From Octopus bimaculoides (Eukaryota), in contig NC_069003.1 in assembly GCF_001194135.2 (NCBI RefSeq), positions 31,608,639-31,672,638 on the forward strand: a DNA stretch of 64,000 nucleotides. Reading direction: 5' to 3'. Shown piece after piece: positions 4,561 through 58,500 of the stretch (position 1 is its first letter; the number at the start of each line of letters is the position of its first letter). The notes beneath the pieces were generated by a model. That model worked only from the letters and a program-made list of their open reading frames with translations. It was not told where the DNA came from and searched no databases. Position numbers and translations under genes: made by a program.

Positions 4561-4939
4561 AATCCTATTAACTTAACATTGCTGTTACTAAGCTATTTTC
4601 TATGATTTTGTCATCTTAGCCTTTTTCAATGTTTGTGTGTGTGTGTGTGTGTGTCTCACCATCTCTCTCTCTCTCTCTCTCTCTCGCTACATAAATCTAT
4701 GCATATGTGTTGTGTCTATATATGTATATTTACCTATGTCTGTTTGTTTTTTCTCTGTGTGTGTGTGTGTGTGTTTGTCTTCATGTGTCTTTCTGTGGAT
4801 GAAATACTCTGGTCCTCCCTCCATCCTCTTCTTCCATCTTGCCACCACATCATTGTTATTTATCATTGTTCTCCTCCAAATCACCCCCCCACCCCCGCTC
4901 TCTCTCCCACCATCTTCAGGTTCCCCACCACCACCACCA

Positions 4940-5598
4940 NNNNNNNNNNNNNNNNNNNNNNNNNNNNNNNNNNNNNNNNNNNNNNNNNNNNNNNNNNNNN
5001 NNNNNNNNNNNNNNNNNNNNNNNNNNNNNNNNNNNNNNNNNNNNNNNNNNNNNNNNNNNNNNNNNNNNNNNNNNNNNNNNNNNNNNNNNNNNNNNNNNNN
5101 NNNNNNNNNNNNNNNNNNNNNNNNNNNNNNNNNNNNNNNNNNNNNNNNNNNNNNNNNNNNNNNNNNNNNNNNNNNNNNNNNNNNNNNNNNNNNNNNNNNN
5201 NNNNNNNNNNNNNNNNNNNNNNNNNNNNNNNNNNNNNNNNNNNNNNNNNNNNNNNNNNNNNNNNNNNNNNNNNNNNNNNNNNNNNNNNNNNNNNNNNNNN
5301 NNNNNNNNNNNNNNNNNNNNNNNNNNNNNNNNNNNNNNNNNNNNNNNNNNNNNNNNNNNNNNNNNNNNNNNNNNNNNNNNNNNNNNNNNNNNNNNNNNNN
5401 NNNNNNNNNNNNNNNNNNNNNNNNNNNNNNNNNNNNNNNNNNNNNNNNNNNNNNNNNNNNNNNNNNNNNNNNNNNNNNNNNNNNNNNNNNNNNNNNNNNN
5501 NNNNNNNNNNNNNNNNNNNNNNNNNNNNNNNNNNNNNNNNNNNNNNNNNNNNNNNNNNNNNNNNNNNNNNNNNNNNNNNNNNNNNNNNNNNNNNNNNN
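4940..5598. other. Assembly gap (other large gaps 26714-26828, 37986-38451, 52368-52563, 62178-62519)
   Basis: Runs of N; all long X-containing ORFs derive from these. Confidence 0.99.
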
Positions 5599-5670
5599 CT
5601 GCCCTTTACTTCTCACCCCAACAATATCTCCTTCGTTACCGCCTCTCCTCGCTGCCCTCTCCACTTCACA

Positions 5671-5713
<43 letters not shown>

Positions 5714-6272
5714 TTTCCATAAATCTTCATCCTTGGGCAAAGGGCTTAACTCATCAAACCAGTTGCTGCTTACCATTGGTGGTGGCGGTGGTGGTAGGAT
5801 TGGTTTAAGATGAACATAAACAAAACATCGGGTACCTCGGCCCCACCCCATACTTCCTTACCCCCACTCCACAAGAAAGAAAAAGCAAAAAAAAAGCAAG
5901 AGATGTTACCTACTTCTTAAGCCTACCATTACTACCGTCCTTCCTTCCATATCTTGAGTAGAGTGTTATAATCCCTTCCAGGAGCAAAATAATAAATATA
6001 TTCGGGTGGAGACCATGTGTGAGGTTCCCCTTTTCTTTCTCACACAAATAGGGGGTCTTTGAATGTAGGACTGTTTGATGGCAACCCATTTTTTTTTTTC
6101 TTTTTAATATAACTACTGCACCCCTTTAAAAAAATAGGTTACCATTTACACACACACACATTATTAATGCAGTACCTAGCACACTCAGCAGATATACATA
6201 CATGCCAACACATTCACTCTCACTTACACATGTACACACACTCACATGCATCTACTCTCACTCATCCGCATG

Positions 6273-6309
<37 letters not shown>

Positions 6310-7106
6310 TCACATGTGTGTACTCTCGCTGACACAAGCACTCTCATTTACATACCTGCATCCTACACATGCACTCTTACACCTCATTTACACTCACCCG
6401 CTCACAATCTTACACACATACTCATACTCACACACACACACACACATCCCATCCACCAATATAAAATATAACCACAACCTATGGTTTACTGCTTTTCCCA
6501 TTCTACCAGAATCCTACAGTGACTCTTCCACCTGTCTTCTTGTCTCCATCTTAATTACTATTCCTCTTCATCTTTACCCCTGTGGCAAATAAAAGAAATT
6601 ATAATTATAATTATGGTGAATTTGCCTTTCATTCTTTCAGGCATGATAAACTATGTACCAGTTGCACACTAGGGCTCGGTGTAATAGATTTATCCCCTCC
6701 CCTGAAACTACTGACCTTGTGTCAAAACTCGAGATCATTATTATTGTTCTTAGAGTCTTGCATGCATAGCTGGCTTGCTGCCTGCAATCTACGGCACCAT
6801 GCTATCTGTTCTTTTCAACTATCTAATACTTTCCTAATTATTCTGGCCATGCCAAAGAGGCAGACCTTTGGTAACAGTTCTACAGGGCACTCTATACTGA
6901 TTTCCTTTTTATTCCTCCTGATGCCTTCTGATACTATCCTCCAGGGACCCAATAATATCTGGCACTTTGCTTGGTGGCATTTTGTCCGTCTTTACATTCC
7001 GAGTTCAAATTCCACTTAGGTCGACTTTGTCTTTCAAGTACTAGGATCGATGTAATTTACTATCCCCCTCCTCAAAAATTTGAGGCCCTGTGCCTCCAGT
7101 AGAAAA

Positions 7107-7275: not shown

Positions 7276-7521
7276 TTAACCCTTTAGCATTTAAACCAGG
7301 CATATCTGGCCCAACTGTTTCACTCGTTTTATGCTCAAACAGGTCAGATCTAGCTTCTCACACCTATCCTACAATGTCATTCTACAAAAATAAACAAAAA
7401 TAAACAAAAATAAACACATCATGAAAATGTTGAAGCCCTGAGATAATGCATGATTAATTCCAAACAGTGTGAATTGATAATCATTACATTTGACAGAGTA
7501 ATCTGAATTCTAAAGGGTTAA
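7276..7521. mobile_element. piggyBac-like MITE family F (copies ~16300-16515, 20947-21182, 40670-40860, 48580-48800, 50750-50969, 61725-62130)
   Basis: TTAA-CCCTTTAG...TAAAGGG-TTAA termini: TTAA target duplication and CCC-starting terminal inverted repeats. Confidence 0.75.
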
Positions 7522-10551: not shown

Positions 10552-11956
10552 GCCAGCAGTTTTATTTCACTTCTTTATTTTTATGACTCAATTGGTTAAC
10601 CATTCAATTAACCAACTAGGCTTGTCAAAAGTCCTTTTGACACCATTTGCAACCTCATCAAAGACATGTCCTCTCTACCTGAAGGCTACTTCCAGTCTGC
10701 CTGCCTGTCTGTCTATCTGCTGTTTAATATATAACCCTATCACAGAAACATGTTATAAAAAAAAAAATGAATCCTGGAAAGATGTCTTATTAATGATGTA
10801 CTTTGAGACACCTCGTTATTAAAGTCTTAATTACATATTTCTCTATACTTCTGCATTTGTTTCCTATACATAATAAAGGAAAAAAAAAACAGGTACAAAG
10901 TTTTAAAATAGGAATAGTTTGAGTTCATCCAAGACAGAGTTGTGGGCATTGTTGACCATTTAAAGTGTGTTTGAATGTTTTCAACTACATTTATACTGAT
11001 CTAACTCAATGTAGATCAATAACTGTATTTTTTTTTTTTTTTTTTTTCTGTTATAAATAAAAGAAATATCCTTTACTCAAGAATTTAGCATTATTCAGAC
11101 TGGATTAGGTGCAGGCATGGCTGTGGTAAGAAGTTTGCTTCCCAACATCATGGCCTTGAGTTCAATCCCACTGCATAGCATCTTCAGCAAGTGTCTTTTT
11201 ACTCTAGCCCCAGGGTTGACCAAGGCCTTGAGTGGATTTCATAGACAGATGCTCAAAGAAGCTTATTTTGTGTGTGTTTCTGTTTCCTTGCTTTGACTTC
11301 ATAGGATTGTTGTAAATGGATGTCCCCATTGTGCTGGTGGTACCCTCTGTTTCTAATCTTCTCTGGAAACCTGTCTGGTCATGGGAAATATTACCCTACT
11401 CGGAAATAGGTGAGGGTTGGCAACAAGAAGGGAATCTGACTGGCAGTTGTAAATCCACCTCCACAAAATCCATCTGACCTATGCAGGCATAGAAAAGCAG
11501 ATTTGACAGTGAAAAAGAAAACATTGTCACACAGGATGCTTCAAAGGTTCTGCACACTGGAACTGAACCTAAAATCATGCCATTGCAAGGTAAATAGTAT
11601 TTTTTTTTTAACCACGTGACCTTCCTTATGTGCGTAACCCCTCAACCAAACCGAACCCACACATGTAGCTAAGTAGCATTTCCTATATATTACTGTGACC
11701 TGCGATCTTTTGGCAAAGTTAAACCAACATTCTGCCATGGGTTAATGAACCAGAAGTCATGGCCAATTTGGTAACCAATGGCGTTCTTCTGACTAATTTG
11801 GAACTAGATGTGTAACTTCTTTCTTTTGTGTTAAACTTAGAAATAGAAACTCTCTCTCTCTCTCTCTCCCTCTCTCTCTACAAATGTATTTGTATGTAAG
11901 TATATATATATATATAAGTTGTGACATTTATACACCAGACCTTAAACATGAGATAT

Positions 11957-11995
<39 letters not shown>

Positions 11996-13254
11996 CAAGC
12001 ACTGTGTCTCATTTTGTGAGTAAAAATATAAAATCGGCTTTTGACGTAGGCACTAAGTTTTTAAGGAGGAAATAGTTGTGTTGACACCAGTACTTGACTT
12101 GTACTTCTTTTGTCAAGTCTGGAATGATGAAAAACAGTAAAGTTGACTTGGTTAGATTAAAAACTCAGACCATAAAGAGAGATAACTAACTATTATACAG
12201 CATGGGTTTTTCGNNNNNNNNNNNNNNNNNNNNGGGGGGGGGGGGTCTGGCCTCGTATTGATTCTACCAGCTATTTTCTGAAATAATAATAATAATAATA
12301 ATAATGATGATGATGGTTTCACATTTTGGCACAAGGCTAACAATTTTCTGGGAGGAGGTAAGTCAATTACATTGACCCCAGTGCTCAACTGGTACTTATT
12401 TTATCGACCCTGAAAGAATGAAAAGCAGAGTCGACCCCAGTGGAATTTGAACTCAGAATGTAAAGATGAACGAAATGCTGCTAAGCATTTTTACTCGGCA
12501 TGCTAATACTTCTGCCAGCTCACTGCATTAATAATGATAATAATAATTCTTTCTACTATAGGTGCAAGGCCTGAAACTTTGGGGTAGGGGGTTAGTCAAT
12601 AACATCAACCTCAGTATTTGATTGGTACTTATTTCATCGACCCCTGCCAAAAAGCTAAAAGGCAAAGTCAGTCCCAGCAGCATTTAAGGTTGACTTTGTC
12701 TTCCATTCTACTATAGACACAATTTGGTGGGAGGAAACTGGGCGATTTCACCAGCCCCAGTGTTCAACTAGTGCTTATTTTATTAACCCCCAGATGCATG
12801 AAAATCAAAGTTTTAACCTTGGCACAATTTGAACTCAGAATGTAAAGAGCTGGAAGAAATACCACCGCTAAGCGCTTGTCTGGCATATAATTCTGCCAGC
12901 TCAATGGTAATAGTAATGATTTCTCTCCTTGTAACAAGGTCACACATTTGTAAAGTGGGGTCGGGTACAGATGGGTGGATCAGCTTCAGTACTTGAGTGG
13001 TTCTTGGGTAAGTCAAAGGAAATCTATTAAGACGTTAACTTACAACATAAAGGTGGTATAAGTAAAATACCACATGCTATTGTACTGTTTCCGCTATAAA
13101 ACTACCTTGTATTGGTTTGAAATTTTGGCACAAGGCCAGTAATTTCAGGGAGTGGGTATGTCAGTTACGTCAACCCCAGTGTTCAACTGGTATTTATTTT
13201 ATTGACCCTGAAAAGATGAAAGGTAAAGTCAACCTCGGCAAAATTTGAACTCAG

Positions 13255-13585: not shown

Positions 13586-16500
13586 ATTTTCTTTAAGATA
13601 GTTGGGTTTGGTTTGAGGAAGATTTAGCCACTATTTCTTGCAGACCATCAGTATTGCACGAGACAGATCACCTTGTATTTGGTTACAGCCCTTTACATTC
13701 CGAGTTCAAACCTTGCCCAGGTCATCTTTGTTATTTCATCCTTCCAAGATTGATAAAATAAATACCAAGACTACTGTACCTTTGAGTGTGGTACCTCCAG
13801 TATGGCCTCAGTCCAATGATTAAAAAAAATCAAAAACAAATAAATAATGACAAAGAATGAAAAAATAATTTAGCTTGTGGGTTAATGGTAGAAATTAATT
13901 ACACTATAGTTTTTAGTTTTTTCTTTTCTCTCCTCTCCCCACTTAACTGACACACATGTAGTTTTCAGCACAAAGGATGTATATATAATTCCAGTTGCAA
14001 AACTGGGTTACTGTAACTTTTGTATATTCACGAAGAGAGAGGTAGAGAGAGAGGGGGTTGGAAGGTTTCATGTAAATGTGAAGTTCACATATGTGGCATC
14101 TCTCACAAGTCTTATGATATTTTATTAAGTTTACTTTCTCTGCTGCCAACCGGGCTACATGTACCCTCTACCGATTGGTTGATTCCTTTAGCTTCTAGAG
14201 AAGGAAACTATATTTCCCAGATTTAATAACACTTCACAAGTACATCTTAAAACACAACAAAACCAACCAAAAGAAGAAAAAAAATTAAATAAAACTCAAA
14301 AAACAAACGAAGAATAAAGTGCCAACATAAGGCATTTTTCAAGTCTGAAATAGCAGCAGCGAAGACTATCTTAAGACTGTCTTTTGATATTCTTTCTGGA
14401 CATATATATTTTTCTGGTTCCTATTACATCCACTCCACGTGAAATTATTTACTGCGATATTTATGGATATTATTCACTGTTCCATTGTTAAGTATTTATT
14501 TCGAATTATTTCTTACTTTCTAACAGGATTCTCACATCTTGAATTTAAAGCAGTATTGTCTTCATTTTATTTATTTAATTTTTTTCTTCTTAATTTCATC
14601 TTCATTGAACTTTCCTTGTGTGTGATGTTATCAGGCATAAATAAAGCTGTTACAGTATTTCTTATCTGTTGCACACGTAATTATACAGAGGCCAATTTCG
14701 AACAAAGGACATTTATTGTTTTTATGGCAGAATCAGTATATAGCTTCATACAAAATATTTTGCGAGAGTTTGTTCTTTCATATCCGAGTTCAAATCACAC
14801 CAAGGTTAATTTTTGAAAACAAAATGGTTTTTTTTTTTTTCAATTTTTGTTTATTTGCCTTTTTTTTTTTTTCTCAGGGATTGATAAAATATTATCAATC
14901 AATAACTGGGATTGGTTTAATTAACTGTATTCACTTCCAAAATTTGTGGAATTATGCCAGCTTGTGACAGAAGTCAATTGTTTTTAATGCTCCAGTTTAG
15001 TTATTCACTTGGTAAATGCGTTTAGCATTAATAAACAAACACTATTAAAGGCCACATTTGTTTATAGTAAATACTGGATTTGTTGTGTTGTATATAAATG
15101 TTGTGTGTGTGTGTGTGTATATAGCTGTAGTCATGTAGGCTGAGTAATGTAGACTAGCTGAGAATAAAAGGGATAAAAATGAAAAGAATCTCTGAAGGAC
15201 CTGAAATTAGTGCCGACGACATTATTAAGAATTTGGTTACAATACTGAATAGTTTAGTATTGGAATTATGTAGATACGAGTATGGGTACCATATGGAGTT
15301 TGGTATTGGTGCTGTGGCTAAGTAGTAGTACTTAGATATTTAAAATAACACTTAAAATATTTAAACTACTTGTGTTTTTTATTTGAACAAGCATCAGAAA
15401 CTTAGAAAAACAATATGAATGTTGAAATAGTTTTGATAATATATTAAAGTGTTTTATTGTAAGCATCAGGGGCATGTGTGTGTTCGTGTGTGCCCACATT
15501 TCCCTAAGAATACTAGGGGCCTTTTCCGGCCGGAGGATTAGCCATGGTTGTCATGATTTACAAAGATTAACCTTGCATCGCTCCCCTCTGGATTGAAGTA
15601 CATCAGTATCACATGTGAATACACCTCCACCTCTTTGAAGGTCTGGTACTGAAATCCCGACATCTAAGTGTTTTTCTTTAGTACACACAAACAACAGTTC
15701 CTACACTGTTTCATCCTATCACCTTTTGAACCGGTCGTTGTTATGTATTTGGCCCCAGTGGGGTGGGTTGCAATTTATTTGATCCCGCAGTGTAGAGGAT
15801 CTAGTGTGTGACTCTTTAAAGCAGTTATTTCTCTAAACACTTTTTTTGTGTGTGGCACACTTTAGAACAAATAAAAATATTTCCGTGTACTTAACATGCA
15901 AAGTGAAACGAAAATGCATTTATAAAAGACAATTATATATTTAAACTTATATATATATGAATAATTATAACTACAAAAAAATTAAGAAATGGAATGTGGT
16001 TACTAAAATTTAATATTTAAATTTCAATTTGTATTTTTCACATATTTTAAACATAATTCTGTTGTTTTCACAGTACACACAACTCAGTAGTACATTGGTA
16101 CACACCAGTGTACAATGACTCAGTGTGTTATGGTGCACCAGCATGTCACGGTATACCAGTATGCCATGGTAGTGCACCAAATCCCTGTTTCAAAGAACTG
16201 ATTTTACCTAGCTGAATGTGTAATGATATATGCTTTCATTAGTAAGATTTCTCATAGTTATCTGCTACTGATATCTGCTTGTTTCAAGAAAATGTAAGGG
16301 TTAACCCTTTTGCATTCAGACTACTCTGTCAAATGTAATGCTCACTTATTCATTTATTATCTCGTAGCTTCAAGGTTTAGATGACGCAATTGTTTATTTT
16401 TAGAATGACATTTGGCGGTTAGGTGTGAGAGGCCAGTTCTGGCTGTTGAAAACAGAATAAACATTAAAGGAATCGAATATTTGGGCTGGAATGGCCAGTT

Positions 16501-16643
16501 TTAAAAGCTAAAGGATTAAAGTCATTAAACTGCCCTTCCTGAGATTAGTTTAACCCTTTTGAAACCACCAACCCACCTAAGACCATTCATGGTTCCATGA
16601 TAACAAATGTCCTCTTTTAAAGCAAAGAACTATAACCAATATC

Positions 16644-16858: not shown

Positions 16859-18445
16859 TTGCACATAATTTTTAGCAAAATCTTATATTGGAAACCAGTT
16901 GAGAATCATTGGTCTAATGGTTCTTCCTTTCTTTCTTTTAGATAAGGTGTGGTCTGAGAAGTCTAGGTACTATTTCTTGCAAGTTGAGTAATCATATAGA
17001 GAAATTTGAAATATCTCTCTTACACTCCACACTATTTATGGATTTTTGTAAAATACAATGGTACCAATTCTAAGTTGTTTTTATCACAGTCTTAAAAAAA
17101 ATGGAATTATTTGATTTTCCCCGAGAAAGAAGAGAATTCTGATGTTTTGACCAGGACCCTCTGTCACTCCTCCGACAAAGGGCTCTGCTTGAAATATCAA
17201 CCCTATCTTCTTTCTTACTGCAAAACAACTTTTATTTCCTTTTATGAACTGTCAGTACTCCATTTACTGATGCAGACCATTACTAGTCTCCTCCAATTCA
17301 ACTGTTAGACATTACTTCAATCATTCCTATGACAGTTGTTGATAATCTGTCTTTAAAAAAACTGTCAGATTGTGTAGTGAATATGGTACATGGATTGACG
17401 ATAATTTGTCATTCATTTTCTCCTTCCCCTCCTTGGCCTTGTCAGTGTCTCTGTATCATTGTCTGGGAAGCCATTGGTGGTGAGACTTTGGTTATAGTCC
17501 TCTTGTATTTCTCCTAAAATGTCTCTTCATCTCTCTCTCTCTCTCACACACACGCAACTGTCACCTATTGCTCCCTGCAACATCACTCCACACAGACTGG
17601 CTCGGCCACAACACTGCCAATCTTGAACTTACACTAGACAGCTTTATCACAATATTAACAATGGTAATAATGTAATATTTAATTATGGTAGGAATAAGTT
17701 AAGCAAGTGTAGACATAAGTATGTTGGTCCAGAGAGGCCATATACCCCATCACCGTTATACACTCACATATTGACATGTAAGGAACCAGGAGCCAAATGG
17801 TACCACACTTGTACAGACTCTTCACAATATATGATTTAGTTATATGTCAAGTTCTCAAAATGTCACTGAGAAAATTCTTTAAGGAGTCATCAACTTGCTA
17901 GAGATAGCAGCCAGATCTTACTTAAATCATACCCCACCTTTTTATTAATGGCAACATAGCTATTGTAGTTCTAAATGTCATTTAAAAAGACAGGATGGTC
18001 ATGGGTGGAATGCCTTTGTGTAGGTTTGTTTAATCAGGTTCATGTGAGACTAAGCAACTGTTACTTTTTTTTTTTTTTAACTTCACTTGAAATTCATTAT
18101 GTTGCTTTGTTTAGCCCTAGGTCAGTTCCAGTCTCCCTTGGAACTATGATCAAAGCATTTTAGATATTCAGACATAGTATATCATTTATATATTGTTTCA
18201 GTCATTGGACTGTGGCCATAAATGTGGCCAAATAAATCAACCTCTAGTCAAACTACCAAGTTTCATATACAAACATTATTTGTGAAGCAGTGGGTGGGTT
18301 TCCATCTTTCAAATTCACTCACAAGGCATTGGTTGGTCCAGAGCTGTAATAGAAGACACCTGCTCCTGAAAGTTGGAACTCTTGTAATCTTTGGCAACAA
18401 TTCTGAAGAAATGTTCTTTTACATTTGAAAGGCACAAAGCTTTCA

Positions 18446-18800: not shown

Positions 18801-20718
18801 TTTTCTTTTATTTTGTTATTGTTTGGCCCCAGTTCAGCCCTAATCAAGCAAATCTATGATTAAAGGTATTCTTTCAATAACTACCCTGTATTCGAATTTC
18901 AGCAATTCATATACAGTGCTGCCATCTTTAAGTTGGTGGGGCTATGATTTGAGGGTGGTTTGGCTGCTGTATCTAAGTTGTGCGATTTCATAGATGAGTC
19001 ATGGGCAAACTGCAGCCCACAGGACTTTCTGAATGGCATGCCTAATGAAAAATTACCTTGAATTCTTTTTTAACAGTGCATCCTGCCTGGTGTTTTGCCA
19101 TGTTTCATGTGGCTTGCTTCACAAAAAGGGTTGCTTATGTGTGTATTAGACACTGCTTTGCTTGTTTGAGTTATCACTGTTATTTCAGAAGGATATCATG
19201 TAGAGAAGGTTTTTTCAAGGTTAAATAATGAGGAGGAAATAAGGAAGTTTGTGAAATAATAGTTGGAAGGGCAGGGGTTGAGAAAACATTGAAGAGCGTT
19301 TGTAAAAACGATGAATGGGGCTTGCAAAATGACTAAGGTTTTGTGGAAACAAATGAAGTTTGTAAAAATGAAACAACCAAGCAACTGTTTATGACAATGT
19401 TTCATAAGCTACTTCCTGTAGTAAGGACGACACTACGTCATTAATTTAGCGTCTTTAATGAATCAGTGGATACTAATCGTTACCTTAACCCCTTTTAGTT
19501 ACCATATTTCTGTTGAAATACATTGCCTTCGTTTAAAGTAATTTTGAAAATAATGAAAAATTTATGGAAGTAATTTAGTTGTTTTGATAAAAACTTGAAG
19601 TGTGGTGGTGGAGGATGGAGTGTCAGTTTTGGGCAGGTGGGTATTAAAAGGGTTAAACTATGGCAAATCAAAATGAAAAGTTTTAAAACTGATTATCTCT
19701 CCAGCTTTGTCCATGTCAGAAGCAATTTTATAAATTATTTATTTAATGTTTTGTTTCGTCTGTCCTTTGTTAGACATATTTTGTGATTGTTGTTTATATA
19801 TAATATTTCATCTCCCAACCAAGGACATTATACCTCTGGAGTTTTTGCCATTAACTGAATTGTTTTACATATTTAATGGTTTGAATTTTTCAAATTGTTG
19901 ATTTCTTTGGGTTTTTTTATCACAATTGCATTGGGGTTTTCGTTTTGTTTTAATCTCAAGATTATAGGTTTGTAATCACACTTTTTTGTTGTTGTTCCTG
20001 TTGCTTTCATGGCGGAAGTGATTGACAGAATTAGTGGATTGATTTGTCATTGTTCTGCGTCTTAAGGAATAATTTTAGCAGATTTACAGCGATTAAACAT
20101 CACTGCCACCACCTTCAACATCAACAAACAACAGTATTGCTGCCATCACAACTGCTGCTGTGGCATACCTTGCATAAATGCAACAAAAACAGAATTTCTG
20201 AAGAAAAAAACCAAAAAAAAAACCCAAACAATCCATTAAGCTCCCTAATCCATCCCTTTTGATCTCGCCAATATAGATTTACATAGACACTAAAATAGCT
20301 TCCGTATCAGAGGACAATGAATGGACTTTAAAAGAAAATATGTTTTAATCAAATTCCCTTCTACTCAGCTTTAAATTTAAATAGTTAACCCAATAAAGGG
20401 TTTAATTTAGCAGGGATTTATATAGCTGCAGTCAATTGTCCTGCAGATTAAATAATTATATCTTTCTGATATAGCTGAGATTAAAATATTGAGTGTTACT
20501 GAGATCTGTTGTTTTGTTCATCCTGTTTTGATTGGAAGATGAAATTATGATAGTAATACATTGTTAGTGTAAAGGTATTTTATTATACCTGTCTTGTTGC
20601 TCTGCATTGATCTACTATAAAGATTTCATTATCTGCAGAGCAGTCAGCCTGATCTGATTGCGACAAGATTCTCCAGCTCTGTTTTATTTCAATAACACTG
20701 CAGCACGTCTTCTCTGCA

Positions 20719-20854
20719 ATGGGTGCTTCATTGTCCAGTTACAAGGGGAAAAAATCCTGCCTGCGTCATAAACTAAAGTGTTATATTATCAAGAGAATGG
20801 GTGTGTTTGCGGATGCTTCTAAGGTTTCTAAAATTGAACCAGAAACTGTTACAA
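20719..20854 (+). CDS. Probable first coding exon of a cytohesin isoform (MGASLSSYKGKKSCLRHKLKCYIIKRMGVFADASKVSKIEPETVT)
   Basis: 45 codons + 1 nt in non-repetitive sequence, ending at AA|GTGAGT. Phase 1 joins exon 39800 in frame (..ETVT-N-LTEDE..). Second in-frame ATG at 20797. Possible upstream 5'UTR intron around 20576-20638. Confidence 0.6.
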
Positions 20855-21349
20855 GTGAGTATATTTTATACTGTTCATCACTAATCAGTCATCTTTTGTC
20901 ATCCAGTTGCTTCTAGTCATATTTCCTTGTCTTCGTCTCTTGAAACTAACCTTTCACTCTTTAGCATTTAAACTAGCCATATCCAGCCCAAATATTCTAT
21001 TTGTTCTATGGCCCAACAAGCCAGATCCAGCTTCTCACACCTACCCTACAATGTCTTCCTAAGAATTAACAATCACATTATTGAAATCTCAAAGCTACAA
21101 GACAATGTATGATTAATAATAAAAACAATGTGTATACATAAATATTGCATTTGACAGACTAATCTGAATACTAAAGGGTTAATCCAAGAGGTGGTGGGGG
21201 AATCAGTAAAATTGGTAGAGCTACATACAAAGTGTCTTGTAGTATTTAATTAAAACATCATTTTTTAAATTTTACTTATTTAAGATGCTAAGCTGTAATT
21301 TAAGGGAGATTTGGTTGCTATTTCTTGCCGGTTAAGTGACTATGTAAAA

Positions 21350-21642
21350 TCTACGAGACCGTTGCCAGTGCCCCTGGACTGGCTCTTGTGCGGGTGGCAC
21401 ATAAAATACACCATTTCGAGCATGGCTGTTGCCAGTACCTCCTGACTGGCTTTCGTGCCGGTGGCATGTAAAAGCACCCACTACACTCTCTGAGTGGTTG
21501 GCGTTAGGAAGGGCATCCAGCTGTAGAAACTCTGCCAAATCAGATTGGAGCCTGGTGTAGCCATCTGGTTTCACCAGTCCTCAGTCAAATCGTCCAACCC
21601 ATGCTAGCATGGAAAGCGGACGTTAAACAATGATGATGATGA
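21350..21642 (+). mobile_element. Short retroelement with (GAT)n tail (family C, RTE-tail-like)
   Basis: ..GGAAGGGCATCCAGCTGTAGAAACTCTGCC..GCGGACGTTAAACAATGATGATGATGAT. Near-identical copies at 16644-16858 (-) and 38452-38676 (+). Confidence 0.8.
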
Positions 21643-22940
21643 TTGGCTGAGGTTTGTTTGTCTATTTTGTTTGTTGTTCAAATGTTGCCAAAGTTAACTT
21701 CATTTTCCATTTTTCTGGGTTGTTACTAAAATAACTACTAGTCATGTGTTGGGACTGATTCAGACAATTACACCCACTTCCCCCAAATGTGCCACAAAAA
21801 CAAAACAAAAACAATCATTATTGTGAGTAGTGGATACTAAATAGGAGTCATTTCAGTTTGTGCTACTCCCTCCACTACGAATATGTCCTTGTACTAAAAC
21901 AATAAACCAATATTTGGAGAATTGTAATTTGTTAACAGACATTAAAGTGTCAGGGTGTTCTCTTTCTCTGTTCCGATTTCAAATTTCACCAAACATCTTA
22001 GCTTAAAACTTCTCCTCCTTGGTTCCTTAGTAGATAAACTAAATACCAGTAGTATATTTATTTAAAACTTTTGTCACCATATTTCTATTGAAATAGACTG
22101 CCCTTGTTTCAATTAATTTTGAAAATAAAGGAAAATTTATTTATATAACTTCATTATAAGCTGAAAATTTATTAAAATAACTTCATTATTAAGCTGAAGT
22201 TTGTATTATAGAACCAAGGGTGATCTCTCTGGTGGGTTGGTACCAAAAGGGTTAATTTATTGCAGTATATTCGCTCGCTCACTCACCCATCCCCATGCAC
22301 ACACACACACACTCATGAACACAATTATAATACAGAGTTCTCATAAAAGAGACTTACATGTGCATATTAGGTATATGTGTAGTTTTCATCTCAAGATAGT
22401 TGGATGAGGAAATGTATTGTCCATATCCTTAGCAGGCCCATCTGCTAAGGATGTGTGTGTTTAATAGGGTGATGCAAAAGACTTTCCATTCTAGATTCAA
22501 TCACTTAGGATCTTTTCTTTTTTTTTTTTTTGCCTTGTGGGGACCCATCTTGACTCTTTTGTTATCATATTGCTGTGGAGATATACTCTGTTTGTTTCAA
22601 TTTATTTTGAAAATAAAGTAGAATTCAGTGAAATAACTAAAGCTGGTGTTTGGCACATAAACTAAAAAAAAGGATATTTTACTGAAACATTTAAATTTAG
22701 AACACTTTAAACAGGGAGTTTGTATTATAAGCACTATGGATAATTTTGGGCGGTTTGGTATCAAAATGATTAAAGAGTTTAATTATACAGGCTCCAAACA
22801 TTCCAAAAAATTCTGACATATGATACATCCATTACATCATATCTATTATAAGTTATGATGAGACTCTGACCTAAAAAAGGTTTCAAGTCCATGAAATTGA
22901 AAATGAAAGACTTCTTTCTAGATGCTAATGTTCCACAGGA

Positions 22941-23140
22941 GGCGCAATGGCCCAGTGGTTACAGCAGCGGACTCGTGGTCATAGGATCGCGGTTTCGATT
23001 CCCAGACCGGGCGTTGTGAGTGTTTATTGAGCGAAAGCACCTAAAGCTCCACGAGGCTCCAACAGGGGATGGTGGCGAACCCTGCTGTACTCTTTCACCA
23101 CAACTTTCTCTCACTCTTACTTCCTGTTTCTGTTGTGCCA
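22941..23140 (+). mobile_element. tRNA-derived SINE, separate family
   Basis: GGCGCAATGGCCCAGTGG (A box) .. GGTTTCGATTCCC (B box), followed by a non-tRNA body; CpG-rich. Confidence 0.7.
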
Positions 23141-24568
23141 TTGCACCTCCACTGTCCACAATCTATACGTACGTACATATATATATACATGTGTGTGAGT
23201 CATTTTGTGTGCCTCTCACCACTGCTTGACAACCAGTGTTGATTTGTTTGTCCTTGTAGCTTAGTGGTTTGGCAAAAGTGATGGTTAGAATAAGTGCCAG
23301 CCTTAAAAAATAAGCACTGGGGTCAATTTATTCAACTAAAACCCTTCAAGGCAGTGCCCCAGAATGGCTGTTGTCTAATGACTGAAACAGGTAAAAGATG
23401 AAATATAACTTGTGTGTGTGTGTGTGTGTTTTGACTAATACTATAATATGGAATTTATCTCCTACTCCTACCACCACAAACCTTTCAGATAGATACAAGC
23501 CTTAATGGTTTTATAATGTAGAATTAGAGTGTTGGACTAAAAGCATTGCATTGTTTAGTTGCTTCCTTTCATAATCAAGAGTGATTTTGTCTTTCCTCTT
23601 CCTGGGGGTCAGTAAATTAAAGTACTGGGAAGGGTTGTGTCAATTTAATCAATTATATCTCACCCACCACCACCACCGCAAATTTGTAGCCATCTGACTG
23701 TATCCCTAATTATTTTTGTCCTCTTTGCCTTTCTGATTTTCTCATTAGTTTGATATTTGGATATCTTCAATTGTTGTGGAACATCTAAGGTGGTTGCAGC
23801 ATGTGGGAGCCAGTTGTGATATATTTGTGTCGTTCGTTTGTAAAAGGAGTGAGTTGTGATATTTGCTTCATTCCCTTGGTATTCTGTTAATTCAAATCGC
23901 ACCAGGAGGGAGAGCAGTGGCTTCAAACTGGTTGTTTTACATCTGAAAAAAATTATAGAAGAATAATTAATGTGGTTTGGTAATAAATAGTTAACAATTC
24001 ATGTTATTAATTAGAATTAGTAAGGCAGCAAACTGGCAGAACCAGCTGCATGCTGGACAAAATGTTTAGTGGTACTTCGTCCATCTGTATGTTCTGGAAC
24101 TCAGACTCCACCGAGGTCACTTTTATCTTTCATCCTTTCAGGGTTGATAAAATAAGTATCAGTTAATCAGCTTCCCCCTCACCTCGAAAATTGCTGACCC
24201 TGTGCCAAAATTTGAAACCATTAATTAGAATTATTGCTTTTTTTCATTTGATCTTACATTTGCTTGAGACAGTTGATAATTCTCAATCTCTGTCTTCTCT
24301 ATATTCTGGCTGTAAATCCATATTCAATAGACACATGATTAAAGTCATTCCAGATATGACCACCACAGTATTTGTTTATCTACACAGTGTATTCACTTAC
24401 ATCAATTGCTTTAGAGGTTTTTTTTTTTAAAGATGATAAGATGTAATTTAAAGGAGATTCAGCTGCTATTTCTAGCTACTTAGAGCCCTTGATGTCTAAA
24501 TTTGTAGCTAGTGGGCACGATATTTATAGTATTAATATTAATGGTGTTGATGCCTGTCATCTCTCCTT

Positions 24569-38676: not shown

Positions 38677-39799
38677 TGTGTAAGTTGTCTCTGTCCCTCC
38701 ATTATACTTCCAGTGATTCTACTCCTTCTCTCAACTAAGAGGTCTTTTGTCTCACAAGCTACTTGGCAACCCCACTGGTGCTGCTGTCATGTAGGAAGAA
38801 CCTGTGCTGATGCCATGTAAAAAGCAGCCAGTACACTCTGTAAAGTTGATGACATTAGGAAGAACAGCCAGCTGTAGAAACCAGGCCAAAACAGACAGCT
38901 GGAGGCTTGGTTCATCACTACAGCTTGCCAGTTCATGTCAAACTGTCCAGCTCATGCCAGCATGGAAAATGGATGTTAAATGGTGATGATACATATAAAA
39001 CAAGGATGTGGTGGTCAAAGATGGAATAATTTTACTATTGATATACTTCTGTTTAATCAGAACTGACCTGAAGCTAAACAGCCAGAACATCCTCTTAATT
39101 GCTATTGCAGCATGACTCACAATGTTGTGTTGTATTACTCAATAGTTTTTAACTGACACTGTGTGTGTTTGAGTACATGTATGTGTGTGTGTGTGTGTGT
39201 GTATGTCATCGTTAACTCATGCCATTATCTTTGACTGTTAACATCTCAACACAATCTGCTTTCACATTGCTGCCTGTGCGTGTTTGTGAGTGAGTGTGTG
39301 TGTGTGTGTGTGTGTGCATGGTTTTAATGAAATGATGACGAAAGTACAAAATGCCATGTACTCTTTGCCCTCTACCCCCACCCCCTCTATAAACCTTGTA
39401 GAGAAATTAAACTACGAAAAGTATTTTGTATAAGTACTTGTGTGTGTGTGTGTGTGTGTGTAAACATGTCGGTGATAATGCACACACACACACACACATT
39501 AATGGTAAGGAACAGATGAATAGGACTCTGGTGACAGAACATAAGTTTGTACATCTCAAATCAAAAGTTGGCTGAAGATTCCAGCTTCTGTTATGCTTTG
39601 TTTGTATGGTCAAACCATCAACGTTTGTGTCCATTTATTCTATGTTCTATGTAACCTTGTGTTCTCCAGGAATTAACCTTACATCGCCTGTATTATATGT
39701 GTAATAGAGATAGGCAGATATTTGTTGTCTGTGAAGAATTTGTCCCAAACTGTCTTAACTTTTGCTTATTATGTGTCTTTTTCCTCTTTTAATTTCTAG

Positions 39800-39873
39800 A
39801 CTTGACTGAGGATGAACAGCAACTCCTGATGACAATAAGGGGACGGAAGCAGCAGCTTGAACTCGACATCAAG
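39800..39873 (+). CDS. CYTH1: Cytohesin (Arf-GEF) coiled-coil exon, equivalent to vertebrate CYTH exon 2
   Basis: Pyrimidine tract + TTCTAG acceptor, 74-nt exon, AAG|GTTGGT donor, phase 1 in and 0 out. Translates (x)LTEDEQQLLMTIRGRKQQLELDIK, aligning without gaps to recalled CYTH1 DLTAEERQELENIRRRKQELLADIQ. The paralogue number is not resolvable; the symbol denotes the family. Confidence 0.92.
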
Positions 39874-55479: not shown

Positions 55480-55544
55480 CGACTCAAAGAAGAAATAGCA
55501 GATGTTACAGCAGAACTGGAAAGTATGGATCTTCCCGAAGACAC
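55480..55544 (+). CDS. CYTH1: Cytohesin coiled-coil exon, equivalent to vertebrate CYTH exon 3
   Basis: Long pyrimidine tract + TTCCAG acceptor, 65-nt exon, AC|GTCAGT donor, phase 0 in and 2 out. Translates RLKEEIADVTAELESMDLPED(T), matching recalled CYTH1 RLKDEIAEVANEIENLGSTEER; in frame with the 39800 exon. Confidence 0.92.
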
Positions 55545-58500
55545 GTCAGTATTTAGTTTTTGTTGTTATTGTTGTTGATTTCTGTTTCTGAGTTCAAATT
55601 CTTCAAGGGAGGTGATTTAATAAAAAAAAAAAAAAGAAGAAAAAAAGGTAACCAGTTCAGTACTGGGTCCAACACAATCAACTTATTCTACATAAAATTC
55701 ACAGCTTTCTGCCAAAGTTAAGAGATCATTATTTTTCTTATTGAGATCACATGAAGCCAAGGCCAACTTTACTGTTTATCCTTCTAGGGTTGATAAAATA
55801 AAGTACCAACTAAATAAACAGTTGGATCCGAAGAAATTAGCAACAGTCTATATTGGCAAATGAGTGTAAACAGCACAAAGGCAGCCTAAACTAGGTTTTG
55901 CTTTGTAGAAGAAGAAAAGTCTAAAATCCCCCCTTCCCCATTGCAAACACATTTATTCCGCTTTTGATCTGTTTTAGTCCTTGGTTTAATTAAATTAAAT
56001 ATTCCCCCACCATCCAACACCATGTGTCTATTTTAGTATTGAAGGCTAGTGACTTGACAGAATTGGTGGGGCAGCTGACAAAAATACCTTGTAGTATTTA
56101 ATCATTTTAGGTTCTGAGTTCAGTTGGTAAGAAAGTAAGAAAAAAAAAAGGTCAAGTTACCGTCTCACATCATGCTGACGCATAAGGGCTGGTTTCCATG
56201 GTGTATAAATATCCCACCTGGACTTGATGCCAATCCATCACAGGATTATTCATTGTTGATTACATTATTCAATGTGTCCCCTACCCCTAATTATTAAAAT
56301 GCTAGTATTCGATTTGAAAGAGATTTGGCTGCTATTTCTAGCAGATCAAGCAGAGGCTCCCTAGTTGTCTTGAAGTGTGTGTGTAGGAGAGTGGGTGAAG
56401 TAAGGCCAATATCAATATTGTTAATTCATTGTTGACACATGTGCAGTGACCAAGGGCTCTTATGGTACATTATTACTGTACCCAAGTAAACTGTTGACCT
56501 AATTACTGGTTGACTTCAGGATTGGTTGGTTTAGTTTTAATTTTGGCCTGAGAGTGTACTAAAAAGTAGATGGCAGAGAAAAATATCTTGGTGGGGGGGG
56601 GAGACATCAACCAAGGTTTTTACCCCACCAATGTTTATATCAGGAACAACTCCCAAAGCATACAGTTTTAAAAACCATATCATTGAACTAGGCTACATAC
56701 AGCATGTATTATTTGCTTGCTTTCCAGCTGTGTCTCATAAAAATGAAGGGTTTATATTAAAATTGGATTTGTTATTTGTATCCCTTTATATATCCTCAAT
56801 TTATATCCATTTATCTATCTTCGATGATGATGATGAGCATTTGTTGCATTCATGCAAGAACTACCACCATGGGGTAGTATGAGTTTGTGTGAATGAGTTA
56901 AAAGTCTTGCTAGGCCACCTTTGCCTTTCATCTTTTCTGGGGGTCAGCAAGTGCCAGTCTACAATTATTGGGTGTGGTATGGGTAGTGTGACCCCTCCCC
57001 CAGCCCATCCTACTCTGTGGCTACTGTCCAATGACTGAAGCCAGTCAGAAAAAAAAAAAAAAACAAACATCGCAACACAATGAAAATATTTTTTCCTGTC
57101 CTCTGGTGTCTATTTATATATTCTGTCATTTTGACCTAAAAATTTAGGGAAAGTAGGGGAGAAGATTTGTTTTTATATTGCACAAAATCGATCTGGTTTT
57201 CCTCTTTGTTATACATACGGACTGTGGTAACACCCGTGTACATAGGCATGCACACACACAAACACACACACATGTATGTGTATATATGTATTTGGCTGTA
57301 TGGTAAAAAGTCTTGTTTCCCAACCTTATGGTTCCGGATTCAGTCCCACTGCAAGGCGCCTTGGTTGACCAAAGCTTTGTGAGTGGATTTGGTAGACAAA
57401 CTGAAAGAAGCTCTTCATATATGAATATACATGTATATATCTATGTGTCTGTGGCTTTGAGTGAAGGCACATGGCTCAGTGGTTAGAGCGTCAGGCTCAC
57501 GATCATGAGGTAGCGAGTTTGATTCCTGGACCAGGCTGTGTGTTGTGTTCTTGAGCAAGACATTTTATTCACTCAACTGTAGAAATGAATTGCAATGTCA
57601 CTGGTGCCAAGCTGTACCAGCCCCTTTGCCTTTTTCTTTGATAATATCAGTGGCACGGAGTGGGGAGGCTGGTATGCATGGGCAACTGTTGGTCTTTCAT
57701 AAACAACCTTGCCCAGACTTGTGCCTCAGAGGGTAACTTTCTAGGTGCAGTCACATGGTCATTTATGACTGAAGGCCGTCTATACCCTTTTTACCCCATG
57801 GCTTTGTGTTTGTCCCCCACCACCACTTGCCAGCTGGTGTTGGTTTATTCTTTTATTTGTTTCAGCCATTTGACTGCAGCCATGCTAGAGCACTGCCTTT
57901 ATTTACATCCCAGTAACTTAGTGGTTCAGCAGAAGAGACTGATGGAATATGTAATAGGTTTTTTAAAAAAATGTAAGTGCTGAGGTCAGTTTGTTCAGCT
58001 AAACTCCTCAAGGCAGTATCCTTGAATGGCTGCCATCCAATGACTGAAACAAACAAATGATAAAAGTTGTGTGTGTGTGTGTGTGTGAAAATGAATTTTG
58101 AGGCAGAAGACATTCTAGTCGATAATTATTGACTGGATTCTCTGACAATGAATAGCCTGAGTGGAAGGAAGGAAGGAAGGAAGAAAGACTTCCTTTAAAC
58201 TTCCAGTCTTCATCATCGGTCTGCAAGATCTTGCTCTCTGTTTAGTTGTCTGTTGCCCACCTCTGAATGTGTTCAGTTACATATTTCAATGGTTTTGACC
58301 AAGTTAATTAATGATGTCTGTTTTGTTCTAATTAATTACTGTCTACCAATGTCCATTAAAGAATGGCCCAGAACTAGTAATTACTTATCTTTTCTCATAT
58401 ATAGCATATATTTCTCTTNNNNNNNNNNNNNNACACAGAATGCCTTTTCTGTGCTGTATGGAATAGGAAGAAGTTCCATTCGACCAATCTCTGATATTTC

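What the first reader, a model, noticed from the sequence alone, without database searches (positions are those of the whole stretch)
20719..20854. Cytohesin isoform with a predicted N-myristoylated, polybasic N-terminus
Seen: 45-codon exon with a strong donor in the correct phase, beginning MGASLSSYKGKKSCLRHKLKCYIIKR. Established: Met-Gly-x-x-x-Ser is the NMT consensus; myristate plus nearby basic residues or cysteines gives stable membrane anchoring (Src-type). Typical cytohesins have a short acidic N-terminus and are recruited conditionally via the PH domain. Inference: this isoform could be a lipid-anchored, phosphoinositide-independent Arf-GEF, while the internal ATG at 20797 gives an unanchored form. 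I do not know whether it is already annotated.
Basis: partly seen in the sequence, partly recalled or inferred. Interest (0 to 1): 0.7.

Follow-up and report, generated by a model that had tools for sequence, protein, structure and literature searches.

The report
Possible lipid-anchored cytohesin first exon
An open reading frame 19 kb upstream of a cytohesin gene's coiled-coil exons could be a first exon that gives this Arf activator a fatty-acid-plus-basic membrane anchor, but nothing available here shows it is expressed, and a chance ORF is almost as likely.

Summary
The sequence facts hold. ATG 20719 opens 45 codons plus 1 nt (MGASLSSYKGKKSCLRHKLKCYIIKR...). The frame ends at CAA|GTGAGT, in phase with the acceptor at 39799/39800. 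A second ATG lies at 20797.

Exons 39800-39873 and 55480-~55544/8 encode a cytohesin N-terminal coiled coil. Their only significant PDB hit is cytohesin-3 residues 15-58. Sec7 and PH lie outside the window.

Met1-Gly2 fits the PROSITE N-myristoylation pattern and residues 1-26 carry net charge +8. Met27 does not fit the pattern.

Nothing shows the exon is used.
- An equally good exon-like candidate arises by chance in about 20% of comparable 40-kb stretches.
- MGxxxS occurs at about 1% of random ORF starts in this window.
- Only codons 27-45 look coding-like.
- The junction gives Asn where 152 of 153 cytohesins have Asp.
- No orthologue, transcript or annotation could be retrieved.

My estimates are rough:
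- real first exon, about 0.55;
- myristoylated Met1 isoform, about 0.3;
- ordinary Met27 start, about 0.25;
- chance ORF, about 0.45.

"Phosphoinositide-independent GEF" overreaches, because cytohesins remain autoinhibited until the PH-domain allosteric site is engaged. No natural myristoylated cytohesin was found in the literature. If real, this is a new variant of two known kinds.

The parts
20616..20622 (+). TATAAAG, a candidate TATA box 103 nt upstream of ATG 20719
   Evidence: Read directly. TATAAA is expected about once per kb per strand at this base composition, so this is weak support only.
20642..20650 (+). Inr-like CAGTCAGCC, 26-30 nt downstream of the TATA. Inferred transcription start near 20646, giving a 5' UTR of about 73 nt
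   Evidence: Read. This is inference from TATA-Inr spacing rules and was not tested.
20719..20854 (+). Candidate first coding exon: 45 codons plus 1 nt, MGASLSSYKGKKSCLRHKLKCYIIKRMGVFADASKVSKIEPETVT
   Evidence: It is unique in the window. No pyrimidine-rich acceptor lies upstream.
20719..20796 (+). Codons 1-26: Met-Gly start that fits PROSITE PS00008, net charge +8, no acidic residue, Cys14 and Cys21
   Evidence: The composition is not coding-like: aa-LLR -5.2 and G at codon position 1 in 11.5%.
20797..20854 (+). Codons 27-45 from the second in-frame ATG (MGVFADASKVSKIEPETVT). The start fails PS00008 because Asp occupies position 6
   Evidence: The composition is coding-like: aa-LLR +4.8 (top 2.3% of the null) and G at codon position 1 in 47% (top 1.8%). 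With the donor it is the best-scoring first-exon candidate upstream of exon 2.
20855..20860 (+). Splice donor GTGAGT (CAA|GTGAGT), phase 1
   Evidence: 9.4 bits.
39780..39799 (+). Polypyrimidine tract and AG acceptor of exon 2. An in-frame TAA at 39790 blocks any 5' extension of the exon
39800..39873 (+). Cytohesin exon 2: (N)LTEDEQQLLMTIRGRKQQLELDIK. Enters in phase 1 and leaves in phase 0; donor AAG|GTTGGT
55480..55548 (+). Cytohesin exon 3: RLKEEIADVTAELESMDLPED(TS). The 3' end is uncertain: 55544 (donor CAC|GTCAGT, 5.2 bits) or 55548 (GTATTT, weak)

Best explanation
The exon is most likely a genuine 5'-terminal coding exon of a cytohesin (Sec7-PH Arf-GEF) gene. It would be spliced from 20854 to exon 2 at 39800 across a 19-kb intron, and it would supply the residues that precede the dimerising coiled coil. 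Which AUG opens the frame is unresolved, and that question decides the biology.

Case (a): transcription starts at the TATA/Inr-like site near 20646, or anywhere upstream of 20719. Met1 is then the first AUG and sits in a strong context. Its product would lose Met1, be N-myristoylated on Gly2 (GASLSS fits the NMT pattern), and be held on acidic membranes by eight Lys/Arg residues within residues 9-26. Cys14 and Cys21 are possible palmitoylation sites. Because the coiled coil dimerises, each dimer would carry two such anchors. That would pre-localise the GEF at the membrane independently of PH-phosphoinositide recruitment. The Sec7 site would still need release of autoinhibition.

Case (b): transcription starts between 20720 and 20796. 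The protein then begins MGVFADASK..., is not an NMT substrate by the pattern, and is an ordinary cytohesin with a short N-terminus.

What is shown: the ORF, the phases, the motifs and the cytohesin identity of exons 2-3. What is inferred: use of the exon, the transcription start site, AUG choice, acylation and localisation.

Rough probabilities: real exon 0.55, of which (a) about 0.30 and (b) about 0.25.
For: A coding first exon with a phase-1 donor must exist upstream. Exon 2 starts in phase 1 behind an in-frame stop, and its first residues LTEDEQQLL align with conserved cytohesin residues that precede its only Met.

Within the 39.8 kb available, this exon's donor plus codons 27-45 give the best combined score of all ATG-to-phase-1-donor candidates. 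Codons 27-45 are as coding-like as the known exons 2 and 3.

No pyrimidine-rich acceptor precedes the ATG: at most 0.65 pyrimidines over 20 nt, against 0.80-0.85 for the real acceptors. An in-frame TGA lies at 20650. Both fit a first exon.

Both ATGs have a purine at -3 and G at +4. TATAAAG lies at -103, followed about 30 nt later by an Inr-like CAGTCAGCC. A 172-nt ATG-free stretch precedes 20719, a length reached by only 3.4% of inter-ATG gaps.

For case (a): the PS00008 match, the +8 charge and the absence of acidic residues. Myristate plus about five basic residues within 20 aa suffices for plasma-membrane targeting of PRMT8 and is enhanced by dimerisation (PMC6827574). The Src myristoyl-basic 20-mer can replace the membrane-targeting PH domain of the GEF Tiam1 (PMC2139766).
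Against: The exon-like structure is not statistically exceptional: p is about 0.18-0.23 per comparable stretch.

The NMT motif occurs at about 1% of random ORF starts here. One such start, 12971-13007, also has a strong in-phase donor. The motif therefore does not discriminate a real exon from chance.

Codons 1-26 look like translated AT-rich non-coding DNA. A polybasic segment would be penalised by those measures anyway.

The ATG-poor zone extends into the intron, over 20340-21008, so it is not specific to a UTR.

The junction codon gives Asn where 152 of 153 cytohesins, nematode to human, have Asp.

No homologue of the 45-aa peptide exists among 1.84 billion representative proteins or in metagenome contigs. 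This is weakly informative, because alternative N-termini are hidden by clustering.
Confidence: 0.55

Rival explanations
1. Chance ORF. An 88-codon stop-free stretch in AT-rich intergenic or intronic DNA happens to contain an ATG-GGT and to end at a GTGAGT in phase 1. The real first coding exon of the cytohesin gene lies elsewhere: either a short exon in the window or one beyond its 5' end.
For: Comparable or better candidates arise in about 17-23% of equivalent stretches. Examples in the real window are 17329-17479 (50 codons, 8.7-bit donor) and 11316-11409 (31 codons, 10.6-bit donor). MGxxxS and a charge of +8 or more each occur at 1% of null ORF starts. Codons 1-26 are not coding-like. Asn replaces the conserved Asp at the junction. 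Cytohesin first exons are usually very short, and short candidates that end in G and restore Asp exist, for example 19615-19636 MECQFWA|D with the best donor in the region. No related peptide was found in any database searched.
Against: Codons 27-45 fall in the top 2% of the null for two correlated coding measures. The candidate is the top-ranked one upstream of exon 2. Kozak context, a TATA box at a suitable distance and the absence of an upstream acceptor all fit a first exon.
Confidence: 0.45
2. Real exon but an ordinary protein (a sub-case of the best explanation). Transcription starts inside 20720-20796 and translation starts at Met27. The product MGVFADASKVSKIEPETVT-N-LTEDEQ... is a short, slightly acidic, non-lipidated N-terminus like that of other cytohesins. 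The upstream in-frame ATG lies in the promoter and is never in the mRNA.
For: The coding-like signal is confined to codons 27-45. Met27 has a strong context and gives the highest combined score. Its N-terminus fails PS00008. Net charge over residues 27-45 is -1, and canonical cytohesin N-termini are short and acidic.
Against: It requires a 5' UTR shorter than 78 nt. An unconstrained in-frame upstream ATG with no intervening stop is expected only about 20% of the time (my estimate from ATG and stop-codon frequencies). The only TATA-like element would place the start upstream of 20719.
Confidence: 0.25
3. Real exon and Met1 is used, but the basic N-terminus acts mainly as something other than a myristoyl-electrostatic plasma-membrane anchor. 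Candidates are a nuclear-localisation or mitochondrial-presequence-like signal, or the Gly is simply not acylated.
For: The segment is rich in Lys/Arg/Ser/Leu and free of acidic residues, like a presequence or an NLS. The isolated PRMT8 myristoyl-basic 20-mer mislocalises to mitochondria when not oligomerised (PMC6827574). The Aplysia cytohesin coiled coil is reported to have a nuclear-export role (title of Jun et al. 2016, cited in PMC9104363).
Against: The start matches the NMT pattern cleanly, with small uncharged residues at 3-7 and Lys at 9. Hydrophobic moment is low, at most 0.44, so there is no amphipathic presequence-type or Arf-type helix.
Confidence: 0.05

Closest known systems
Cytohesin family Arf-GEFs (cytohesin-1, ARNO/cytohesin-2, Grp1/cytohesin-3, cytohesin-4; Drosophila Steppke; Aplysia ApSec7)
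   Same: Exons 2-3 encode a peptide 49-56% identical to the N-terminal coiled coil at the same position, residues ~10-58. Cytohesin-3 is the only significant PDB hit. The first-exon/exon-2 junction lies just before the coiled coil, where vertebrate alternative first exons also join.
   Different: Described cytohesins have short acidic N-termini (MEEDDSY.., MEDGVYEPP.., MDEDGGGEGGG..). They reach membranes through the PH domain, the C-terminal polybasic region and Arf6/Arl4-GTP (PMC6948192, PMC9104363). No natural N-myristoylated cytohesin was found in the literature searched. Sec7 and PH of this gene are outside the window.
Myristoyl-electrostatic anchors (c-Src, MARCKS, PRMT8)
   Same: Met-Gly start that fits the NMT pattern, followed by a basic cluster within about 25 residues. 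In PRMT8, 20 residues with myristate plus 5 basic residues suffice for plasma-membrane targeting, and dimerisation strengthens it (PMC6827574). Here there are 8 Lys/Arg followed by a dimerising coiled coil.
   Different: There is no sequence homology. Acylation and membrane binding are untested. The charge density (+8 in 26 residues, with no acidic residue) is higher than in the PRMT8 N-terminal 20-mer, which carries 5 basic residues (PMC6827574).
Tiam1, a naturally N-myristoylated Rac GEF with a membrane-targeting PH domain
   Same: A GEF that combines an N-terminal myristoylation consensus with a PH-domain recruitment module. The Src myristoyl-basic 20-mer can functionally replace the Tiam1 N-terminal PH domain (PMC2139766).
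   Different: Tiam1 belongs to a different GEF family (DH-PH, acting on Rac). [quoted passage not shown] The candidate here has the basic cluster.
Vertebrate cytohesin-1 alternative N-terminus MGTVSELC[AV]SSFQAFLCP
   Same: An alternative first exon of a cytohesin gene that starts Met-Gly, contains two Cys, and joins just upstream of the coiled coil. It is conserved from rays to teleosts, birds and turtles.
   Different: It shows no similarity to MGASLSS... beyond Met-Gly. It has Glu at position 6, so it fails PS00008. It has no basic cluster. No homologue of it exists in the window.

Membership tests
Cytohesin (Sec7-PH Arf-GEF) gene | N-terminal heptad coiled coil homologous to the cytohesin CC, at the N-terminus | tested here: met
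   Spliced exons 2-3 against human CYTH1 residues 10-56: 49% identity, 46 bits, pairwise E=1e-11. They are 52-56% identical to lamprey and teleost sequences. Cytohesin-3 (6u3e) residues 15-58 is the only PDB sequence below E=0.01 out of 177,635.
Cytohesin (Sec7-PH Arf-GEF) gene | Sec7 catalytic domain | not testable with these tools
   tblastn finds no Sec7 exon in the window. The gene runs off the 3' end of the window, at least 8.4 kb after exon 3.
Cytohesin (Sec7-PH Arf-GEF) gene | [quoted passage not shown] | not testable with these tools
   Outside the window.
Genuine first coding exon | Start codon, open frame, and a donor whose phase matches the next exon | tested here: met
Genuine first coding exon | Signal stronger than chance in this sequence | tested here: inconclusive
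   p is about 0.18 in Markov simulation and about 0.2 from the empirical null. Codons 27-45 are in the top 2% for coding-like composition, while codons 1-26 are not coding-like.
Genuine first coding exon | Transcript evidence (junction reads, TSS) | not testable with these tools
   No transcript data for this organism was reachable. Exact-sequence look-ups of four window ORFs were not on record.
Genuine first coding exon | Conservation in related species | tested here: inconclusive
   No hit was found among 1.84e9 representative proteins, among 90%-identity clusters of similar length, or in metagenome contigs. No cephalopod or mollusc cytohesin could be retrieved, so absence of a hit is not evidence of absence.
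N-myristoyltransferase substrates | Met1-Gly2 and the pattern G-{EDRKHPFYW}-x(2)-[STAGCN]-{P} (PROSITE PS00008, quoted from my own knowledge) | tested here: met
   GASLSS matches. The Met27 start (GVFADA) does not. The same pattern fits 1.0% of null ORF starts in the window.
N-myristoyltransferase substrates | Gly2 is the real N-terminus of a translated protein and is acylated | not testable with these tools
   This needs TSS mapping, N-terminomics or metabolic labelling.
Myristoyl-electrostatic anchor (Src/MARCKS/PRMT8 type) | Basic cluster close to the acylated Gly | tested here: met
   8 Lys/Arg, 1 His and 0 Asp/Glu in residues 1-26. A net charge of +8 or more occurs in 1.0% of null 26-mers, and most of the others derive from poly-A runs.
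Dual-acylated N-termini (Fyn/Lck/G-alpha type) | Cys at position 3 or within the first ~6 residues | tested here: not met
   The Cys residues are at positions 14 and 21. Distal palmitoylation, as in eNOS (from my own knowledge), is not excluded.
Arf-type myristoylated amphipathic helix | High hydrophobic moment in the N-terminal 11-18 residues | tested here: not met
   muH is at most 0.44 for 11-mers and at most 0.26 for 18-mers within residues 1-30.

The most novel reading that the evidence does not exclude
This (probably cephalopod) cytohesin gene makes, from its own TATA-type promoter, an isoform whose N-terminus is myristoylated on Gly2 and carries a +8 basic cluster about 20 residues ahead of the dimerising coiled coil. 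Cys14 and Cys21 may add palmitoylation. Each dimer would then sit constitutively on acidic membranes through two lipid-electrostatic anchors. Recruitment of an Arf-GEF would be uncoupled from PI3K/PIP2 sensing by the PH domain, leaving only the allosteric step (Arf6/Arl4-GTP) to gate activity. This would be the first natural lipid-anchored cytohesin.
Probability: 0.3. Interest if true: 0.5.

Novelty: new variant of a known kind. Interest (0 to 1): 0.3.

Why it matters
Cytohesins are the textbook case of conditionally recruited Arf-GEFs, with PH-phosphoinositide binding plus Arf/Arl-GTP feedback. A natural isoform with a permanent myristoyl-polybasic anchor would separate recruitment from allosteric activation within one gene. 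It would give a natural experiment on how much of cytohesin signalling is recruitment-limited, and it would point to isoform-specific Arf6 control in cephalopod cells, for example neurons.

The side observation also matters. Vertebrate cytohesin-1 has a deeply conserved Met-Gly/Cys-containing alternative N-terminus, which suggests that N-terminal isoform diversity in this family is under-studied.

If the exon is not real, the case is a useful warning. An NMT motif occurs at about 1% of random ORF starts in AT-rich DNA, roughly the order of frequency I would expect among real proteins (my estimate). The motif by itself therefore says nothing about whether an exon is genuine.

Tried and rejected
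1. I searched the 93-aa spliced product in the 5.8-billion-protein collection and found nothing. later showed that this tool collects only candidates of a length similar to the query (at most 250 aa for a 144-aa query). The negative therefore says nothing about full-length cytohesins.

2. I built a chimeric query (window N-terminus plus universal Sec7/PH motifs) meant to float mollusc cytohesins to the top. It returned only short fragments, mostly vertebrate or insect-like, with no N-termini.

3. A human CYTH1 query returned 2005 hits, but the 120 listed are all vertebrate.

The 45-aa exon peptide alone gave 0 hits.

5. A metagenome scan with the 65-aa read-through ORF gave nothing.

6. Exact look-ups of four window ORFs were not on record, so the source organism was not identified by any tool.

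7. The exon tail (KVSKIEPETVT) appeared similar to the vertebrate first exon MVLKTEEEDVPS. It is not above chance, since 67% of null peptides score as well.

8. tblastn of 95 vertebrate cytohesin N-termini against the window found no homologue of any vertebrate alternative first exon.

9. Pfam shows no domain in the ORF. The window contains no tRNA or Rfam feature.

10. GC-rich peaks at 21300-21640 and 22940-23100 were considered as CpG-type promoters. They were rejected because they read as SINE-like repeats.

11. The 'MTET' mini-exon at 23378-23390 was rejected because it lies at the end of a stretch that reads as a SINE-like repeat (the resemblance to an octopus SINE tail is from my own memory, and repetition was not tested).

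12. An internal-cassette reading was rejected. An exon from the AG at 20637-20638 would be 216 nt long and would carry the in-frame TGA at 20650. No upstream AG has a good pyrimidine tract.

13. Literature searches found nothing: myristoylated cytohesin/ARNO/GRP1/Steppke, the peptide strings themselves, and cytohesin plus cephalopod.

Full report
**The observation**

- ATG 20719 sits in the context GCAATGG and is followed by GGT.
- The frame is open for 45 codons plus one base, reading MGASLSSYKGKKSCLRHKLKCYIIKRMGVFADASKVSKIEPETVT.
- It ends at CAA|GTGAGT, with the donor G at 20855. The donor scores 9.4 bits on a generic metazoan matrix.
- An in-frame TGA at 20650 closes the frame upstream.
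- A second in-frame ATG at 20797 (AGAATGG) starts MGVFADASK.
- The phase-1 end fits the acceptor tttcctcttttaatttctag|AC at 39799/39800, and the junction codon A+AC encodes Asn.
- The exon region is unique in the window. A ~230-bp interspersed repeat begins only at 20951.
- No AG upstream of the ATG has a good pyrimidine tract: at most 0.65 pyrimidines over 20 nt, against 0.80-0.85 for the acceptors of exons 2 and 3. If the exon is real, it is therefore a first exon.

**What gene this is**

Only two downstream exons lie in the window.
- Exon 2 is 39800-39873, encoding (N)LTEDEQQLLMTIRGRKQQLELDIK.
- Exon 3 starts at 55480 and ends at 55544 or 55548, encoding RLKEEIADVTAELESMDLPED(TS).

Each exon alone gives a weak tblastn hit to human cytohesin-1, but the two hits are collinear and adjacent.

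Spliced together, they align to CYTH1 residues 10-56 at 49% identity (46 bits). They are 52-56% identical to lamprey and teleost cytohesins. Against 177,635 distinct PDB sequences, the only hit below E=0.01 is cytohesin-3, residues 15-58.

The cytohesin call is therefore sound for the coiled coil. The Sec7 and PH domains lie beyond the window and could not be checked.

Exon 2 begins in phase 1 behind an in-frame TAA. Its first residues are homologous to conserved cytohesin residues that precede its only Met. A coding first exon with a phase-1 donor must therefore exist somewhere upstream.

The organism was not identified by any tool. The window has 36% GC, 15-19-kb introns, many assembly gaps and SINE-like repeats.

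**Is the exon more than chance?**

Not demonstrably.
- In first-order Markov simulations of the 39.8 kb upstream of exon 2, a phase-1 candidate of at least 45 codons with a donor of at least 9 bits appeared in 17.5% of runs.
- The real sequence holds comparable decoys: 17329-17479 (50 codons, 8.7 bits) and 11316-11409 (31 codons, 10.6 bits).
- I combined donor score with an amino-acid-composition log-odds and used the other strand and phases as an empirical null. About 0.2 equally good candidates are then expected per comparable stretch.

The features that made the finding attractive do not help to decide.
- The PROSITE N-myristoylation pattern fits 1.0% of the 617 open ATG-initiated 26-mers in this window. 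That is, by my estimate, the same order of frequency as among real proteins.
- One of these, MGGSASVLEWFL at 12971-13007, even has a strong in-phase donor.
- A net charge of +8 or more is also found in 1.0% of null 26-mers.

**Evidence inside the exon**

The two halves behave differently.

| Segment | aa log-odds (bits) | G at codon position 1 | Rank against null |
|---|---|---|---|
| Codons 27-45 | +4.8 | 47% | top 2.3% and top 1.8% |
| Codons 1-26 | -5.2 | 11.5% | like non-coding translation |
| Exon 2 | +4.3 | 25% | known exon |
| Exon 3 | +8.2 | 48% | known exon |

A Lys/Arg-rich segment is inevitably penalised by both measures, so the low score of codons 1-26 is not decisive.

With the donor, the Met27 version is the top-scoring first-exon candidate in the whole upstream region. 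The Met1 version ranks sixth.

Points that fit a first exon:
- Both ATGs have strong contexts.
- TATAAAG lies at 20616-20622, with an Inr-like CAGTCAGCC 26-30 nt downstream. This would start the mRNA near 20646, upstream of Met1.
- 20719 is preceded by a 172-nt ATG-free gap, a length reached by only 3.4% of gaps. However, the ATG-poor zone also covers the start of the intron.

Point against: the junction gives Asn where 152 of 153 cytohesins in hand, nematode to human, have Asp. An exon ending in G would restore the Asp.

**Evidence from elsewhere**

None could be obtained.
- The 93-aa spliced product found nothing. One search showed that this tool gathers only proteins of similar length, so full-length cytohesins were never candidates.
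- A human CYTH1 query listed only vertebrates.
- The exhaustive HMMER search accepted only the 45-aa peptide and found no relative among 1.84 billion representatives.
- A metagenome scan and four exact ORF look-ups were empty.
- The literature held no myristoylated cytohesin, none of the peptide strings, and nothing on cephalopod cytohesins.

**How it would work if real**

If the mRNA includes 20719, scanning ribosomes meet Met1 first, in a strong context. The expected sequence of events is as follows.
1. Met1 is removed, because the next residue is Gly.
2. NMT acylates Gly2. GASLSS fits G-{EDRKHPFYW}-x(2)-[STAGCN]-{P}, and GVFADA at Met27 does not.
3. Eight Lys/Arg residues within residues 9-26, with no acidic residue, add electrostatic binding to acidic membranes.

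This is a Src/MARCKS/PRMT8-type anchor and not an Arf-type amphipathic helix, because the hydrophobic moment is at most 0.44.

Several published results bear on the mechanism.
- In PRMT8, 20 residues with myristate plus five basic residues suffice for plasma-membrane targeting, and dimerisation strengthens it (PMC6827574).
- The Src myristoyl-basic 20-mer can replace the membrane-targeting PH domain of the GEF Tiam1. The lone myristate of Tiam1 is not sufficient (PMC2139766).
- Cytohesins dimerise through the coiled coil that starts about 20 residues after the basic cluster (PMC6948192). A dimer would therefore carry two anchors.

Recruitment independent of PH-lipid binding is thus plausible by analogy.

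Activity independent of phosphoinositides is not plausible on present knowledge. The Sec7 site is occluded by the Sec7-PH linker and the C-terminal helix/polybasic region. It is released by Arf6-GTP binding at the PH-domain allosteric site, aided by membranes (PMC5752578, PMC6948192).

**Comparison with what is known**

Described cytohesins have short acidic N-termini. The 2022 review lists only the di-/tri-glycine PH-domain splice variants (PMC9104363).

Vertebrate cytohesin-1 does have a deeply conserved alternative first exon starting Met-Gly, MGTVSELC[AV]SSFQAFLCP. It is found in rays, teleosts, birds and turtles. It fails the NMT pattern because Glu occupies position 6, it has no basic cluster, and it has no counterpart in this window.

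Two RefSeq models begin with MGxxxS: Neofelis CYTH3 X2 and Dromaius CYTH1 X2. They occur at about the chance rate.

A myristoyl-polybasic cytohesin would therefore be a new combination of two known modules.

**Verdict**

My estimates are rough, and they rest on the chance rates above plus several small likelihood ratios.
- Genuine first exon: about 0.55.
- Met1-initiated, myristoylatable isoform: about 0.30.
- Ordinary Met27-initiated isoform: about 0.25.
- Chance ORF: about 0.45.

Interest is modest at 0.3. The idea is neat and cheaply testable with public RNA-seq, but it is unproven, and even if true it is a variant within known mechanisms.

Noticed in passing
Not in the window: proteins P0022, P0023, P0073, P0256, P0259-P0263, P0266: Vertebrate cytohesin-1 genes (rays, teleost cyth1a/b, birds, turtles) share a conserved alternative N-terminus, MGTVSELC[AV]SS[FL]Q[AT]F[LM]CP. 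It starts Met-Gly and has two conserved Cys residues. It fails the PROSITE NMT pattern because Glu occupies position 6, and the cytohesin review I read does not mention it. It might be a lipidated (palmitoylated?) isoform.
   Followed up: partly
window 20951-21185; also 7276-7521, 16298-16521(-), 40672-40858, 48579-48797(-), 50750-50969, 61720-61837(-): A ~230-bp interspersed repeat family has at least 7 copies at 67-77% identity. One copy starts 97 bp downstream of the candidate donor.
   Followed up: partly
window 22940-23100 and 21300-21640: These two segments have 45-52% GC in a 36% GC background. The first has a tRNA-like head (ggcccagtggtta...ggtttcgattccc), although ARAGORN finds no tRNA. 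The second ends in (ATG)n. Both read as SINE-like repeats and not as CpG-type promoters.
   Followed up: partly
window 19615-19636: A short alternative first-exon candidate, MECQFWA|D, has the best donor upstream of exon 2 (CAG|GTGGGT, 11.6 bits). Its final G would restore the conserved Asp of 'DLT'. It has two upstream ATGs within 60 nt and a W/C-rich peptide, so it is not convincing either.
   Followed up: partly
window 12971-13007: A second ORF starts with an NMT-pattern N-terminus (MGGSASVLEWFL) and ends at a strong phase-1 donor (TGG|GTAAGT, 8.8 bits). It shows how easily such motifs arise by chance here.
   Followed up: no
junction 20854/39800: The residue before Leu-Thr/Ser at the start of the coiled coil is Asp in 152 of 153 cytohesins retrieved. 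The proposed splice gives Asn.
   Followed up: yes
window 4246-6592, and N runs at 4940-5598, 37986-38451, 62178-62519 and elsewhere: The window contains CAT/CAC and CA/TC microsatellite tracts that give long His-rich pseudo-ORFs. It also has eleven assembly gaps totalling 1,905 N. This is a draft-quality assembly, so a missing first exon inside a gap cannot be excluded.
   Followed up: no
method: The word-indexed protein search appears to collect only candidates of a length similar to the query: at most 250 aa for a 144-aa query. Short spliced N-terminal queries therefore cannot retrieve full-length proteins, and negatives from such queries should not be read as absence.
   Followed up: yes
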